Shown here: piece by piece, positions 50,250 to 55,207 of the stretch
Numbering within the stretch: the first letter of the stretch is position 1
How the letters are laid out: each line of letters begins with the position of its first letter
Assembly (NCBI GenBank): GCA_904063045.1
Contig: CAJFCJ010000007.1
Span: 3,975,404-4,039,403, forward strand
Length of the DNA stretch: 64,000 nt
Direction of reading: 5' to 3'
Source: Dimorphilus gyrociliatus
Lineage: Eukaryota; Animalia; Annelida
The notes under the pieces: generated by a model
Told to the model about the DNA's origin: nothing
Seen by the model: only the letters and a program-made list of their open reading frames with translations
Databases searched by the model: none
Program-made: the position numbers and the translations under genes

Positions 50250-53200
50250 TCAAGATCCACCTCTTTTGTCGGACTTATTCCTTTTCCGAGGGTTGGGTAT
50301 TTGCAAAGGAGGAGGCATTAGATTACTTTCGCTAGCCGACTGTTTTCAAACAACTAAATTTGAAAGGAATTAGTTAAGTATTTAAACACGAACTGTTGCC
50401 TTTCTTGAAAGTGTTGGTGATGGTGATGGACTTGCTCTTCTAAAGAGATTCTCTATTCCAGCTGTTATTGAACTTTTTCTAGGTGTAGCTGACATAAATA
50501 GACTGATTAAATATACTATAAAGAAAAGAGAAGTAATAATTTGATATCATACAGTCCATTCCTTCAGCCCATGATCGCCTGAAGCCTAAAGCCGAAGCAA
50601 TACCAAGAGTTTTTTCACTGTATGAGCCTTTTCTCTTAAATGCTGTTGTACCTGAATAAAATTGATCAAATTTAGCCTTAAAACCTAATTCCACTATTAA
50701 AAAAACATACTTGGAACTTTTAATTGTCTTCCACCACCAATAAGCAATCCTGTATAGATATTAAATAACAAACAAATTATAAGAGTATTTAAGATTTATC
50801 AAGTAATAGTGCCACATGAATACATAAAACTCTCTGCAACTCGGTGTTTCTATTACAGGTTCAAAATTATATAAATAAATAATCATATTTTTGTTATTAT
50901 TTACGAATAGTTTCTTTTATCTTTAATGGTAAATATACATGCATCAACATCATTTTGATGAAGATAAACATTTTAAACACCAAAACAAAGTCTGTGCACA
51001 TAATACAAAATCTTTACCATGCAATTTTGTTTCTCTTTGCTTAAAATTATGCTCAATAACACCAGAAACCAATAACAACAATTATTTGTGTTTGGTATCT
51101 ATACAATATATCATCAATCTATGAAAGTACCTAAAGGAGAGAATTTGAAATCATGCGAAAAGAGAAAAACCGTTCAGCAGTTACAACGGCAAATTGTGCA
51201 ACAAGTATAGATTATACCTTTTAATAAGAAAGAAAATGTTTAGTATACAAACGACACGGAGTAAATTTTCTATCAAACGATGTAACAAATGATAAAAAAG
51301 GTGAATCAATGATTAATAGTAAATTATAAGATAAAATCTAAATACTGTCAATTTATTAATGAATTCATTAAAGGATAAATCATTATTGGCTGAATATTTA
51401 AAATAATAAGGTAAGGAATGTTATTTATCAAAAAAAAAAGGAAAATCTTCATAAAATTTGTAGTGGATTGACAATTTTAAACTAATTAAGTGAAGTATAG
51501 ATATGATCTAATCTACTCGCATAATAAAAAATATAAGTACTGCAAAATGTAACTTATCATATTAGAAATAAGAGATTGTAACACAATGTGACGTAATATC
51601 TTAACCGTTTAACGTTTAGTTTATAAAGGTGGACATTATTCTTTTGACTACCTCACTTTGTGTTACAACATATTTTGCTGAGTCTTTTTCTTTTAGAAAA
51701 AGGATTAAAAAAACTTAATAGCATCATTAAAACAATTTTGATAAAATAAAGAAAAACATGCGAAGGAAAGTGTGTAAATTATTATCATTAATTTTTGTGA
51801 ATCGCAATGACCTTTGTTGATTTGCCACTATTGTTGTTTAGAGCTGCAGAAAGAAAATGCTTCTTAAAGATAAATTTGATAAATAAATAGAAGTAAAAAG
51901 ATATTGACTATTCAAGAAAAATAAATATAAAAAATAGAAATGTTTCATATGTTTTATATAGAAAGAAAAAAAATTTTAATATTCCTACGTTTTTGTGATT
52001 GGTGAATCTTTTCTTAAAGTTACAACTTCGTATTGTTGTACCCTACGACTCCTTTTTCTCTTTAGAACATCTAAACATCCTGTTTATAGTGATCAATAAA
52101 TTAATCAGCTTCACCTTACGTTTTAAATTGTTGTTGTTATTCTGATATTGTTATATCCCTTCATTTTAATACAAATGACGCCTTGTTTATACAAAAAACA
52201 TAATTGACATAATAAACTCTGAAAGGTATGTGTCATGTATATATTTAAAAAAAGTGTATACGTATGTAATTAATGATAAATAAAAAAAAAACCAATGAAT
52301 CTACTTAAATAAGTATAAAATCTTACTTTGACAATTTGCAGATGCTTTGCGCGGAAGGTATTCGTTTGGTATTTTACCACTGTAGTCTCTAATACTTATG
52401 TCAGCACCTATTTCAAGTATTATTTTTAATGAAAGAATATAAAAACAAGTGAAAAGAATTCTTTGAACTATGTACCGTATCCACCAGTTAATAATTCTAT
52501 AACACCTTCTCGATTTTGCATGGCAGCTAGATGAAGAGGTGTATATCCCTATAAAAGATACATTATAGTAAAAATGAAATCGTAATACCAATGATAAAAT
52601 ACTTACACCCTAAAAGAAAGTGAATCGCCGTACAGGCATAGTTGATTAAAATGTTCAAAGATTTATTGTTTTTGTTAAAATACTTACATGCTGAATAAAT
52701 AAAGGACAAACTTATTAAATTATACTTTTATGAAATAAATATACACACTGTTCTTGCATTAATATTAATATCTAAGTTATGCTTCCTTCCAGTTGACATT
52801 ATGGCTTTAATTACATCCTTCTGACCTTTCTTACTTGCCCAGTGAATTGCGGTCTAACATAAGAATTAATCAACGATTTATTAAGAATATAAAAGATAAG
52901 TTTGACTAATCATTCGATACTCACATACTAGAGGTTTAACATTGTTTTTCACGGTTATTAATGTTGATTAATTTTGAAGAAATTATTTTACAGTTTAGTA
53001 AATAAGGTATTATGTGTATAAAAAATCTTACCCCATTAGTTACATCTGCAAATGTAGCTAATTCAGGTCGATCTCTTAAAAGTTGTGTCATTTTCTGTAT
53101 ATTACATTTGCACGAAGCTAACATCCATAATCTTTGATTTGGTGTTAAATCCTATATAACGCAAAGTGTGTTTCAAATGATATTACTAAATAAACGTTAA

Positions 53201-54352
53201 TCTTTACCTCATCGCATTTATTTTCGTTCTTTGGTGGATATTTGAAAAATTAACAAGTATTAATATATAATAGAATTAATGCTAATAAAGAATCGTACTT
53301 CATCATTTTTATCCCTAACTTTAGCAGGCATTTGTTTCTTTTGCTCAGCTTTAAGATCTATCTGTAACTGATCTATCTGATTAGCTCTATCCTTGACGCT
53401 GAATGTATCGTTCAACTGTACAGAGATTCGAAGGAAAATGAAAATGTTAAAAGCTCTGATTAATTGTCAAATAAAGTAAGTTATATACCTGTTCTTTAAG
53501 AACATCAGCTCCCATGAGCTTAATATTCAGCTTTGGAATATCTTCGGACTCTTGTTGTACAGCTACTGGTGTTGGAGCTGGTGTAGTTTCTACACTCGTG
53601 TCAACTGTTGAACTTTCAGCACTTTCAGTTAGTTTTTCTTCTGATTGAGCGTCATCAATAACAACAGAAGGAATATTCAATGGGTTATTTTCGGTAGTCT
53701 CAGAGGTATTCGAATTTTTACTAGGCTCCTCAAAAACATTATTATTTAGTGGCTCTTCAGGTAAGTTCTCCCCAGCGGGTTCTTCCGCCTCAGCAATAAC
53801 AGCAGCTGAAGCATTTTTTATTGATTGCTCCACAGAAGCCATTACACTTGAGAGTAAATCCGATTCTTCTTCCCCTTCTTGAGGTAGTTTTTCATCCAAT
53901 TCACTAACACGGCTTGCATCATTCTTGAATGGATTTTTTTCGGGACGACGTTTTGGCTTATAGAATTTTCTACTCTCTTCATGAACAGGCGTTTCAGGAG
54001 TGTCATCACGAAATTGTTTTCGAAGAACGAGAATTTTGTCCCGTGACTTTTAAAGGCAAACAATGTTTTTAAATTAAGTTAAAAGAGCTTCTAGAAATTC
54101 TTACCGATAGATCTTGTTTTGTAACACATATCTTATTGATTATATCTTTGAAATTTTTACGATTTTGGTCTATTTGAAAGTTTTAAATCTTGTATTATCG
54201 CTCATTGAGATAAATTATTTGATTATTACCATACCTTTAAAACGAGGATCTTTCAGATAATTACGAAAATGAACAACCAACTCTGCGTTACTTATTTTTC
54301 CGCCTTGATTAGCTATAAAACTTCGAATTAACTCCTCGTCAACTTCCGCCAT
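50250..54352 (-). CDS. SOWAH: Ankyrin repeat domain-containing protein SOWAH (sosondowah)
   Basis: N-terminal MAEVDEELIRSFIANQGGKISNAELVVHFRNYL, acidic linker, SVKDRA motif, ankyrin repeats (RLWMLAS..NGYTAIHWASK..NARTHGGYTPLHLAAM..IRDYSGK) and a basic C-terminus. Confidence 0.88.
52607..52609 (-). other. 3-nt microexon GGT (Gly) of SOWAH
   Basis: ctttcttttAG|GGT|GTAAGT; flanking introns are 78 and 58 nt; with the CAT exon it restores ART-H-G-GYTPLH. Confidence 0.82.
52688..52690 (-). other. 3-nt microexon CAT (His) of SOWAH
   Basis: ctttatttattcAG|CAT|GTAAGT; flanking introns are 58 and 78 nt. Confidence 0.82.
52925..52927 (-). other. 3-nt microexon TAT (Tyr) of SOWAH
   Basis: aaacctctAG|TAT|GTGAGT; flanking introns are 104 and 71 nt; restores NG-Y-TAIHW. 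Confidence 0.8.
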
Positions 54353-55207
54353 TGTAATGTAAATAAACAGTTGATGGAATACGAAGATTTAAAGGTTCAA
54401 TGAACTAGAATTAATATAAAAAGATAAAAACGAAAGAAAAAATAGATTTATAAAAAACAATTTTTTATAAAGATTCTTTTTACAACTTTAGACAGTAAAA
54501 TTGTTTTTTTTTTCTTTAACTGAAGGTATTCAATATGGCGCCAGTTTTAAATATCTATTTTTTTAAAAAGTAAATAAAGTGCATATTAATAATGTTCTAC
54601 TCTCTTTTTATAAGATATTGTACAGAGGATAATTATTTTTAAATTGTAATGAACGAGTGGTTCGTGTATTTTAGAATTTGGAAAATAACATAATAATGTG
54701 AAATATATGCTAGAATAGTAGTACTCTATTAGGCCAGAATATAGTATTCAAGAGAACATTATAGTGTCGATTCAAAGAAAGGAATTACCTAAAAAATGAT
54801 CTTATTACAGTTTTCACTAAAAAATAACTAAAAAATAGAAGATGAAACAGCACTTTAACAACGGATTATCTGGTAGTTTAAGGAAATCAGACAATAATAA
54901 GCAGTAAACAGAAGATAAAAAATGTATACATAAATGGACAAGAATATGTATATATCATAATAAACATTGTAATATGAATCTGGCTTTCAACTTAAAAAAA
55001 CGATGCCTCGACCTAATTAAGCATACTAAAGTGTAAGTGAATATCATTTACCTATACAACGCGTTTTATATCTTTATATTTTATGCTGTTAATAAAGTAG
55101 AAAAAAAATCTATCGTGCCTCGTTTTATTCTCTTTTATTCGTCTCTTTCCAATTAAAAAAGTAACAACGTATACAAAACAAATAATTAATAAAATTCTAA
55201 TAACATG

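What the first reader, a model, noticed from the sequence alone, without database searches (positions are those of the whole stretch)
52607..52927. Three single-codon (3-nt) microexons build the SOWAH ankyrin repeats
Within 320 bp on the minus strand there are three AG|NNN|GT(A/G)AGT motifs: TAT (52927-52925), CAT (52690-52688) and GGT (52609-52607). Each has a consensus donor, and the flanking introns are normal for this genome (104, 71, 58, 78 and 58 nt). Without them the protein reads VTNG-TAIHW and INART-GYTPLH. With them it reads VTNGYTAIHW and INARTHGGYTPLH, which restores the register of vertebrate SOWAH as I recall it (SGFTALHW, NARSHGGYTPLH). All three are phase 0, so any subset keeps the frame: up to 8 isoforms differing by single residues in the ankyrin beta-hairpin fingers, a usual partner-binding surface. 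Two consecutive one-codon exons in an otherwise intron-minimised genome are unexpected, and gene predictors would miss them. Whether they are constitutive or a tissue-specific switch is unknown.
Basis: partly seen in the sequence, partly recalled or inferred. Interest (0 to 1): 0.88.

Follow-up and report, generated by a model that had tools for sequence, protein, structure and literature searches.

The report
Three real one-codon exons in SOWAH
Three exons only three bases long, each adding one amino acid to the ankyrin repeats of the SOWAH gene of the tiny worm Dimorphilus gyrociliatus, are present in its mRNA, are missing from the published gene model, and correspond to a set of tiny exons also found in molluscs and insects.

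Summary
Confirmed. The window is Dimorphilus gyrociliatus, and the gene is its SOWAH ortholog (DgyrCDS6636), on the minus strand.

- **Transcript evidence.** Contigs from four public runs join 53032 to 52853 with three extra letters that read TAT on the gene strand. Three of those runs join 52749 to 52548 with six extra letters that read CATGGT.
- **Annotation.** The annotated protein lacks all three residues.
- **Donors.** Of 12 transcript-supported introns, only the three that follow these exons have a GTRAGTAT donor.
- **Conservation.** The array is old.
  - Abalone and a freshwater mussel have 12 nt | G | Y | exon | H or N | G | exon.
  - A wasp and Drosophila have 12 | G | Y | exon | NG (6 nt) | exon.
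  - A leech has fused them into neighbouring exons, and a gecko SOWAHA is intronless.
- **Prior knowledge.** FlyBase already annotates the fly exons (TAT, GGC, AACGGG), and one study lists them as constitutive.
- **Isoforms.** I saw no skipped form, so the proposed 8-isoform switch has no support.

This is a new member of a known kind. The conservation across protostomes and the widespread misannotation are the new parts.

The parts
50554..54352 (-). SOWAH ortholog (DgyrCDS6636). The ATG is at 54352-54350. The annotated model runs on to distal 3' exons mapped at 50747-50554.
   Evidence: P0001 is 100% identical over exon 3, carries precomputed Pfam PF25877 (SOWAH winged helix) plus Ank, and its best named hits are SOWAHA/B/C.
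53208..53228 (-). 21-nt microexon encoding NENKCDE. It is present in the annotation.
   Evidence: joints 53299->53228 and 53207->53150 with the stated cut shift.
53032..53151 (-). Exon 6 (120 nt), ending ...FADVTNG. Its donor is GGG|GTAAGA.
52928..53031 (-). Intron of 104 nt.
52925..52927 (-). 3-nt microexon TAT (Tyr), at position 3 of the ankyrin-repeat consensus. Context: ctctag|TAT|gtgagtat.
   Evidence: table 5c: ATA lies between 52853 and 53032 in X1, X3, X5 and X6; this is the only AG-TAT-GT in the intron.
52854..52924 (-). Intron of 71 nt.
52749..52853 (-). Exon 8 (105 nt), TAIHWASKK...ININART.
   Evidence: Pfam Ank profile positions 4-29.
52691..52748 (-). Intron of 58 nt.
52688..52690 (-). 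3-nt microexon CAT (His). Context: attcag|CAT|gtaagtat.
   Evidence: table 5c: ACCATG lies between 52548 and 52749 in X3, X5 and X6. CAT|GGT is the only GT-AG split.
52610..52687 (-). Intron of 78 nt between the two consecutive one-codon exons.
52607..52609 (-). 3-nt microexon GGT (Gly). Context: ttttag|GGT|gtaagtat.
52549..52606 (-). Intron of 58 nt.
52476..52548 (-). Exon 11 (73 nt), GYTPLHLAAMQNREGVIELLTGGY.
   Evidence: Pfam Ank profile positions 2-21, E = 2.6e-5.

Best explanation
These are three genuine internal exons of one codon each (Tyr, His, Gly) in the Dimorphilus gyrociliatus SOWAH gene, and they are most likely spliced in constitutively.

**What they encode.** They supply residues of the beta-hairpin/turn that precedes helix 1 of two successive ankyrin repeats: ..VTNG-Y-TAIHW.. 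and ..NART-H-G-GYTPLH... Without them the repeats would be one and two residues short of the canonical register.

**Where they come from.** They are the annelid remnant of an old protostome array of tiny exons in SOWAH, roughly 12 nt | G | Y | 90-105-nt exon | x | G. Dimorphilus has fused the 12-nt and G exons to the upstream exon. It has kept Y and the split x | G pair.

**How they are probably spliced (inferred, not shown).**
- A 3-nt exon is too small for a 3' splice-site complex and U1 to sit on it together. The flanking short introns (58-104 nt) are therefore probably recognised one at a time by intron definition and removed in sequence.
- Once one neighbour is removed, the codon belongs to a normal-sized exon.
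- The exonic half of the donor is fixed by the codon (TAT, CAT, GGT instead of CAG). Recognition would then rest on an extended intronic match to U1, GT[AG]AGTAT.
- This works like a recursive splice site that leaves three bases behind.
For: **Shown**
- mRNA contigs of 4 runs from 3 studies carry exactly TAT (4 runs) and CATGGT (3 runs) at the two joints. All flanking exons match with no differences.
- There is only one GT-AG solution for these letters.
- Only these 3 of the 12 transcript-supported donors in the gene are GTRAGT, and all three are GTRAGTAT.
- The annotated protein lacks the 3 residues.
- All roughly 25 transcript-derived or intronless SOWAH proteins examined carry the corresponding residues.

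**Orthologous exons found in genomic DNA, in the right introns and the right order**
- Haliotis: GGT, TAT, CAC, GGG. These are the only 4 AGNNNGTRAGT matches on the gene strand of a 33-kb locus. They match the H. rubra RefSeq protein NFTNGYTALHW...RTHGGYTPLH.
- Sinanodonta: GGG, TAT, AAT, GGG, which are 4 of 5 matches in 53 kb.
- Aphidius: GGT, TAT, then a 6-nt AATGGG.
- D. simulans: GGC, TAT, then a 6-nt AACGGG.
- The chance of an ordered G-then-Y pair in these introns is 1e-5 to 8e-4 per species.
- A Mytilus transcript protein differs from the annotated one by DFTNGY and NG.

**From the literature**
- D. melanogaster sowah has FlyBase-annotated microexons TAT, GGC, AACGGG and TGCCCTGCAACG. 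RNA-seq confirms them and all are listed as constitutive (PMC8042270 Suppl. Tables 4-5).
Against: - The transcript evidence is assembled contigs, which drop rare variants, so a minor skipped isoform cannot be excluded.
- The CAT and GGT exons are seen in X3, X5 and X6 only. X1 covers only the TAT joint.
- X5 and X6 belong to the same study as the probable source sample of this DNA. The X3, X5 and X6 contigs look alike, so they are not fully independent.
- The order of intron removal and the role of the strong donors are inferences. No partly spliced intermediates were examined.
- For the 3-nt exons in other species I searched with GTRAGT in the pattern. Donor strength there is partly ascertained, not independently observed. 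The 12-nt and 6-nt exons were searched with GT only, and 5 of 6 still had GTRAGT.
- Some RefSeq isoforms in Drosophila, wasps and a butterfly lack G and/or Y. This could reflect real skipping or alignment failure.
Confidence: 0.92

Rival explanations
1. The three codons are regulated cassette exons. Any subset can be skipped in frame, giving up to 8 isoforms that change the length of the ankyrin fingers in particular tissues or stages.
For: - All three are phase 0, so skipping keeps the frame.
- RefSeq isoforms in other species differ by exactly these residues: D. subobscura X3 DPAT-YTALHW versus X2 DPAT--TALHW, and Belonocnema, Aphidius X2 and Aricia ..SSG-TALHW.
Against: - Every contig across these joints in all four runs carries the full-inclusion form, at the full contig depth (tables 5 and 5c).
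- The four fly sowah microexons are on the list of constitutively spliced CDS microexons (PMC8042270 Suppl. Table 5 sheet 2).
- Every transcript-derived ortholog and every intronless vertebrate paralog examined has the residues.
- Skipping would break the G-x-T-P-L-H register of a structural repeat.
- Isoforms in automatic annotation that lack a 3-nt exon are an expected aligner artefact.
- There is no UGC motif in the 25 nt upstream of any of the three acceptors.
Confidence: 0.07
2. The extra letters do not come from this locus. They would be an assembly artefact, come from an identical paralog or retrocopy that holds the codons, or arise from shifted use of ordinary splice sites.
For: Contigs have no direction and are assemblies. 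X3, X5 and X6 give near-identical contigs.
Against: - The same letters appear in an unrelated coral metatranscriptome, X1.
- Exons match with no differences.
- The letters match the single GT-AG-compatible solution in the introns. No extension of a neighbouring exon can give them.
- The same exons exist in five other animals at the same protein positions.
Confidence: 0.01

Closest known systems
Drosophila melanogaster sowah (FBgn0036302) microexons: TGCCCTGCAACG (12 nt), GGC (3), TAT (3), AACGGG (6)
   Same: Same gene family and same protein positions (CPAT|G|Y|TALHW ... NART|NG|GYTPLH), with the same TAT codon for Tyr. They are constitutive in the fly (PMC8042270 Suppl. Tables 4-5). I found the same layout in D. 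simulans DNA, with GTAAGT or GTGAGT donors.
   Different: In Dimorphilus the 12-nt and G exons are fused to the upstream exon. The x-G pair is split into two 3-nt exons (H | G), as in molluscs, not joined as one 6-nt exon. Introns are 58-104 nt here, against about 1-20 kb in the D. simulans locus.
Other documented 3-nt microexons: cytohesin-1 (diglycine/triglycine), mouse Ncam, Drosophila TnT, human RPS24 (3, 18 and 22 bp)
   Same: A single codon, or 3 bases, flanked by two introns and missed by ordinary aligners (PMC6314551; PMC8042270 introduction; PMC12207440).
   Different: Those are alternatively spliced and change function or the C-terminus. The SOWAH exons look constitutive and structural, and here two of them stand back to back.
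Conserved, misannotated plant microexon clusters, including the 1-nt exons of APC11 and VPS55
   Same: Ultra-short constitutive coding exons that have been conserved for hundreds of millions of years, are routinely missing from annotations, have conserved GTRAGT donors, and have intronless copies in some lineages (PMC8831610).
   Different: A different kingdom and different genes. The sizes there are 1-15 nt and often not multiples of 3.
Recursive splice sites (ratchet points, AG|GTRAGT) of Drosophila long introns (from my own knowledge)
   Same: An acceptor followed almost at once by a strong consensus donor. Splicing must proceed in steps.
   Different: A ratchet point leaves no bases in the mRNA and serves very long introns. 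Here three bases stay in the mRNA and the introns are 58-104 nt.
eMIC/SRRM4-dependent neural microexons (from my own knowledge)
   Same: Very short frame-preserving exons on protein surfaces.
   Different: Those are alternative, neural, and depend on a UGC motif close to the acceptor. No UGC lies within 25 nt of these three acceptors, and there is no sign of skipping.

Membership tests
Internal coding microexon (3 nt) | The bases are present in mature mRNA between two exon-exon joints. | tested here: met
   table 5c: TAT in 4 runs and CATGGT in 3 runs.
Internal coding microexon (3 nt) | Flanked on both sides by canonical AG...GT splice signals in the genome, with no alternative source for the letters. 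| tested here: met
Internal coding microexon (3 nt) | Alternative (cassette) use. | tested here: inconclusive
   Only the inclusion form is seen in contigs, and contigs drop rare variants. The fly orthologs are listed as constitutive.
SOWAH (sosondowah) ankyrin-repeat family | N-terminal SOWAHA-C winged-helix domain (PF25877). | tested here: met
   The precomputed Pfam for P0001 includes PF25877. N-terminal residues are conserved in alignment A2. My own hmmscan listed only Ank families, and I do not know whether its Pfam copy holds PF25877.
SOWAH (sosondowah) ankyrin-repeat family | C-terminal ankyrin repeats with the motifs G[FY]TA[LI]HW, GGYTPLH and RDYSGK. | tested here: met
   The invariant columns include GYTPLH and RDYSGK.
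Orthologs of the fly sowah microexon array | Same protein positions for the tiny exons in other phyla. | tested here: met
   Haliotis, Sinanodonta, Aphidius and D. simulans genomic DNA. D. melanogaster from PMC8042270.
eMIC/SRRM4-type neural microexon | A UGC motif close upstream of the acceptor, and tissue-restricted inclusion. | tested here: not met
   No TGC in the last 25 nt of the three upstream introns. Tissue restriction could not be tested.
Recursive splice site (zero-length exon) | AG directly abutting GTRAGT, with nothing retained in the mRNA. | tested here: not met
   Three bases lie between AG and GT, and they are retained.

The most novel reading that the evidence does not exclude
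The array of single-codon exons in SOWAH (G, Y, x, G) has been kept for more than half a billion years in annelids, molluscs and insects, even though a simple intron loss would remove it, as happened in the leech and in vertebrates. The most novel reading is that the tiny exons or their introns do something beyond coding. One version is an obligatory ordered-splicing step, with detained introns, that gates SOWAH expression. Another is cell-type-specific skipping that shortens the ankyrin fingers by one residue at a time.
Probability: 0.15. Interest if true: 0.8.

Novelty: new member of a known kind. Interest (0 to 1): 0.6.

Why it matters
- **The published protein is wrong.** DgyrCDS6636 lacks three residues in a structural repeat. 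About half of the genome-annotation SOWAH models I looked at have the same error or a larger one at the same two places. These include spiders, bivalves, gastropods, wasps and several Drosophila species.
- **It is a clean natural test case** for how a spliceosome handles exons too short to be defined as exons. Here there are two back-to-back 3-nt exons with 58-78-nt introns and unusually long matches to U1.
- **It is unusually deep conservation.** One-codon exons shared by annelids, molluscs and insects, down to the same TAT codon in the six species examined, are an exceptionally old example of ultra-short exon conservation in animals. In D. melanogaster, sowah holds 2 of only 10 three-base exons in the main (TopHat) list of PMC8042270.
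- **The pattern is a simple annotation check.** AG|NNN|GTRAGT combined with a missing residue in a repeat could be used to repair annotations.

Tried and rejected
1. Pfam on single exons by reference gave only weak Ank hits and no SOWAH domain. It was useful only for the repeat register.
2. The first homology search, restricted to the ankyrin region, was swamped by ANKRD28/PP6 subunits.
3. The profile search with A2 returned almost only vertebrates in its best 120 hits, so it did not help with invertebrates.
4. The Argiope locus could not be fetched because the gene range is over 100 kb. D. subobscura X3 is not on record.
5. I considered a single 6-nt exon, other 2-way or 3-way splits of CATGGT, and shifted splice sites. 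I rejected them because no GT-AG-compatible alternative exists.
6. The window-wide excess of AGNNNGTRAGT is not significant: 6 observed against 2.64 expected, with 6 of 100 shuffles reaching 6. I therefore did not use it as evidence. I did not examine the three other matches (33047, 45792, 59967).
7. I did not type the spliced protein into any tool. The searches used exon 3 by reference, which recovered the annotated protein.
8. L007, a Logan contig 60% identical in the ankyrin region, comes from an unknown organism and was not followed up.
9. No paper in the library holds both 'sowah' and 'microexon' in its main text. The fly exons appear only in a supplementary table.
Full report
**What is in the sequence**

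On the minus strand the region reads:

...GTA ACT AAT GGG|gtaaga...ctctag|TAT|gtgagtat...tgttag|ACC GCA ATT CAC TGG ... GCA AGA ACA|gtgtgt...attcag|CAT|gtaagtat...ttttag|GGT|gtaagtat...ttatag|GGA TAT ACA CCT CTT CAT...

The three motifs are at 52927-52925, 52690-52688 and 52609-52607. AGNNNGTRAGT occurs six times in the window against 2.64 expected, and 6 of 100 shuffles reach six. The window-wide count proves nothing. The clustering of three in-phase copies inside two introns of one gene is what stands out.

**Transcript test**

Seven public runs hold this stretch.
- Run X4 holds all of the sampled words, as expected for genomic DNA.
- Runs X3, X5, X6 and X7 hold 0.30 of the sampled words of 52440-53160. 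That is about the fraction of 31-mers lying wholly inside the three ordinary exons there, which is what spliced RNA would give.

I laid X3, X5, X6 and the coral metatranscriptome X1 on 51900-54450.
- One contig per run covers the gene with no differing letters.
- The joint 52853/53032 carries three letters that lie on neither side: ATA on the + strand, TAT on the gene strand. This holds in X1, X3, X5 and X6.
- The joint 52548/52749 carries ACCATG, which is CATGGT on the gene strand. This holds in X3, X5 and X6.
- The depth of these letters equals the depth of the joints. No contig without them was listed.

An exhaustive search of the two introns shows one AG-TAT-GT, no AG-CATGGT-GT, and a single two-exon split with GT-AG introns: CAT at 52690 and GGT at 52609. 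Neither neighbouring exon can be extended to give the letters. The three one-codon exons are therefore real.

Two limits apply. Contigs show presence and drop rare variants. X5 and X6 come from the same study as the probable source of this DNA.

**Gene model**

One search also fixes the rest of the gene.
- The ATG is at 54352.
- The exons are 54352-54235, 54169-54105, 54046-53489, 53415-53299, a 21-nt exon at 53228-53208 (NENKCDE), 53151-53032, TAT, 52853-52749, CAT, GGT, 52548-52476, 52407-52327 and 52079-51989. One further exon starts near 51843.
- Among the 12 supported introns, only the three that follow the one-codon exons have a GTRAGT donor, and all three read GT[AG]AGTAT. The other nine are GTATGG, GTAAGA, GTATAT, GTACGA, GTAAAG, GTAAGA, GTGTGT, GTACAT and GTAAGA.
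- From my own knowledge, the 5' end of U1 snRNA pairs with CAG|GUAAGUAU. These donors therefore pair through position +8, while their exonic half (TAT, CAT, GGT) is fixed by the codon.

**Organism and family**

Searching exon 3 by reference found a 526-aa protein that is 100% identical over the exon. It is DgyrCDS6636 of Dimorphilus gyrociliatus, and its precomputed Pfam hits include the SOWAH winged-helix domain PF25877 and ankyrin repeats. That annotated protein reads ...ADVTNGTAIHW... and ...ININARTGYTPLH.... It therefore lacks all three residues, although it does include the 21-nt exon.

Pfam Ank aligns T of TAIHW to profile position 4 and G-Y of GYTPLH to positions 2-3. Tyr therefore fills position 3 of one repeat. 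His-Gly lengthen the loop before the next repeat to the usual N-x-x-x-x-x-G-x-T-P-L-H spacing.

**Orthologs: the residues**

- Vertebrate SOWAHA/B/C read DF[MV][ST]G[FL]T[AC][LI]HW and [KR][AS]xGGYTPLH.
- All transcript-derived invertebrate proteins read D-x-x-x-G-[YFH]-[TSA]-[AGP]-[LI]-H-W and x-G-G-Y-[TS]-[PA]-L-H. These come from Logan, JGI, ENA, metaclust and TSA sources.
- About half of the genome-annotation models lack the two residues before GYTPLH, some or all of the six residues before TALHW, or both. The affected models are Argiope, Oedothorax, Solemya, Sinanodonta, Potamilus, Mytilus, Mactra (second site only), Haliotis cracherodii, Nucella, Babylonia, Lymnaea, Physella, Bulinus, Arctopsyche, one Aphidius model, and D. 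serrata, D. setifemur, D. sechellia and D. persimilis.
- A Mytilus transcript protein is 95% identical to the annotated M. galloprovincialis protein. It differs from it by DFTNGY and NG at these two places, plus a 3-residue gap (NEQ) elsewhere.

**Orthologs: the DNA**

| Species (locus) | Layout found |
|---|---|
| Sinanodonta woodiana (L001, 53.5 kb) | DFTS (12 nt, 15141), GGG (15778), TAT (16252), TALHF exon (19876), AAT (21897), GGG (22312), GYTPLH exon (25135) |
| Haliotis cracherodii (L003, 33 kb) | NFTN (12 nt, 11156), GGT (13425), TAT (13693), ALHW exon, CAC (15373), GGG (15890), GYTPLH exon |
| Aphidius gifuensis (L002) | DPSS (12 nt, 44264), GGT (44429), TAT (49400), TALHW exon (58380), one 6-nt exon AATGGG (58593), GYTALH exon |
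| D. simulans (L006) | CPAT (12 nt, 24594), GGC (27576), TAT (28611), TALHW exon (31539), 6-nt AACGGG (31729), GYTPLH exon |
| Helobdella robusta (L004) | GY lies inside a normal exon and TQGG heads the GYTPLH exon; no 3-nt exons remain |
| Gekko SOWAHA (L005) | One uninterrupted reading frame |

- In Sinanodonta, AGNNNGTRAGT occurs five times on the gene strand, and four of the five are the exons listed.
- In Haliotis the pattern occurs four times in all, and all four are the exons listed. Every one has a GTAAGT donor. The predicted G, Y, H and G match the H. rubra RefSeq protein NFTNGYTALHW...SRTHGGYTPLH.
- From base composition, the chance of an ordered G-then-Y pair of such motifs in the relevant intron is 1e-5 to 8e-4 per species.
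- One caveat: I found the 3-nt exons with GTRAGT in the search pattern. The 12-nt and 6-nt exons were searched with GT alone, and five of the six still have GTRAGT.

**What was already known**

- No paper in the library holds both 'sowah' and 'microexon' in its text.
- Supplementary Table 4 of PMC8042270 lists four FlyBase-annotated, RNA-seq-confirmed microexons in D. melanogaster sowah: TAT, GGC, AACGGG and TGCCCTGCAACG. Its main (TopHat) sheet lists only ten 3-nt exons for the whole fly genome, and sowah holds two of them.
- Supplementary Table 5 of the same paper places all four among the constitutively spliced CDS microexons.
- The existence of one-codon exons in sowah is therefore on record for the fly. 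I did not find their conservation into molluscs and annelids, their split x|G form, or their widespread loss from annotations described anywhere.
- The closest parallel in the literature is in plants. Conserved microexon clusters there, including 1-nt exons with conserved GTRAGT donors and intronless copies in some lineages, are pervasively misannotated (PMC8831610).
- The Dimorphilus genome paper reports a median intron of 66 bp and high retention of ancestral introns (PMC7854359). That fits the retention seen here.

**How it most likely works**

Shown: the codons are in the mRNA, they come from these three sites, their donors are the strongest in the gene, and the layout is ancestral.

Inferred:
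- A 3-nt exon cannot hold a 3' splice-site complex and U1 at once. The short flanking introns are probably recognised singly and removed one after another.
- After the first removal, the codon sits at the end of a normal exon.
- The extended intronic match to U1 compensates for the non-consensus exonic bases.
- This resembles a recursive splice site, except that three bases are kept.

The protein role is most simply structural. The residues complete the G-x-T-P-L-H turn and the loop before it. Every intronless or transcript-derived relative has them.

**The isoform idea**

Skipping any subset would keep the frame. Some RefSeq isoforms in other insects lack G and/or Y. Against this:
- Only full inclusion was seen in the contigs.
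- The fly exons are listed as constitutive.
- There is no UGC near the acceptors.
- Aligners are known to drop 3-nt exons.

I give regulated skipping about 7%.

**Verdict**

The feature is a new member of a known kind. Its added value is the cross-phylum conservation and the annotation errors it exposes.

Noticed in passing
window 53208-53228 (-): A 21-nt microexon (NENKCDE) lies two exons upstream. Transcript contigs confirm it and the annotation includes it. Its donor is the weak GTAAAG.
   Followed up: yes
window 51843-52327 and 50554-50747 (-): The gene has two different 3' ends. Contigs join exon 12 (ending 52327) to 52079-51989 and then to an exon near 51843, which gives a short tail ending ...SPITKTSKQQ. 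This route has about 40% of the depth of the main contig (180 against 464 in X3). The annotated protein instead continues into distal exons at 50747-50554 (RLLIGGGRQLKVPS...). The main contig stops exactly at 52326, as expected at a branch point.
   Followed up: partly
window 52182-52349: A low-depth contig in X6 (depth 3.5) runs unspliced across the exon 12 donor, so some of the 247-nt intron is retained or an alternative end is used.
   Followed up: no
window 53563-54046 and 52784-53150: Dimorphilus SOWAH mRNA turns up in a coral metatranscriptome (X1) and faintly in a marine metatranscriptome (X2). X1 carries one T>A difference at 53642, so it is a different strain or population.
   Followed up: no
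L001, L003, L002, L006 and the window: The Tyr microexon is TAT, never TAC, in all six species examined: Dimorphilus, Sinanodonta, Haliotis, Aphidius, D. simulans and D. melanogaster. The Gly exons vary (GGT, GGG, GGC). This may be a splicing constraint or chance.
   Followed up: no
P0015 (Potamilus streckersoni): This gene model replaces the microexon region with about 260 residues of repetitive sequence (...GNLIAMFEGKQDTI... repeated). It is probably an intronic tandem repeat read as exon.
   Followed up: no
P0146 versus P0145 (Mytilus): Besides DFTNGY and NG, the transcript protein has three more residues (NEQ) than the annotated one at about residue 150. This may be another small missed exon or a splice-site difference.
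   Followed up: no
L007 (Logan contig of ERR11673232), 296-1174: A contig from an unknown organism is 60% identical to the Dimorphilus ankyrin region. RTSGGYTPLH...NFYGADPNIRDYSGKK is contiguous in it, and the sequence upstream looks intronic. This would be a relative in which the x-G codons are fused to the GYTPLH exon, and in which the intron Dimorphilus has after ...GGY is absent.
   Followed up: partly
window 33047, 45792, 59967 (-): The three other AGNNNGTRAGT matches in the window are also on the minus strand. I did not check whether they are ordinary exon ends or further one-codon exons.
   Followed up: no
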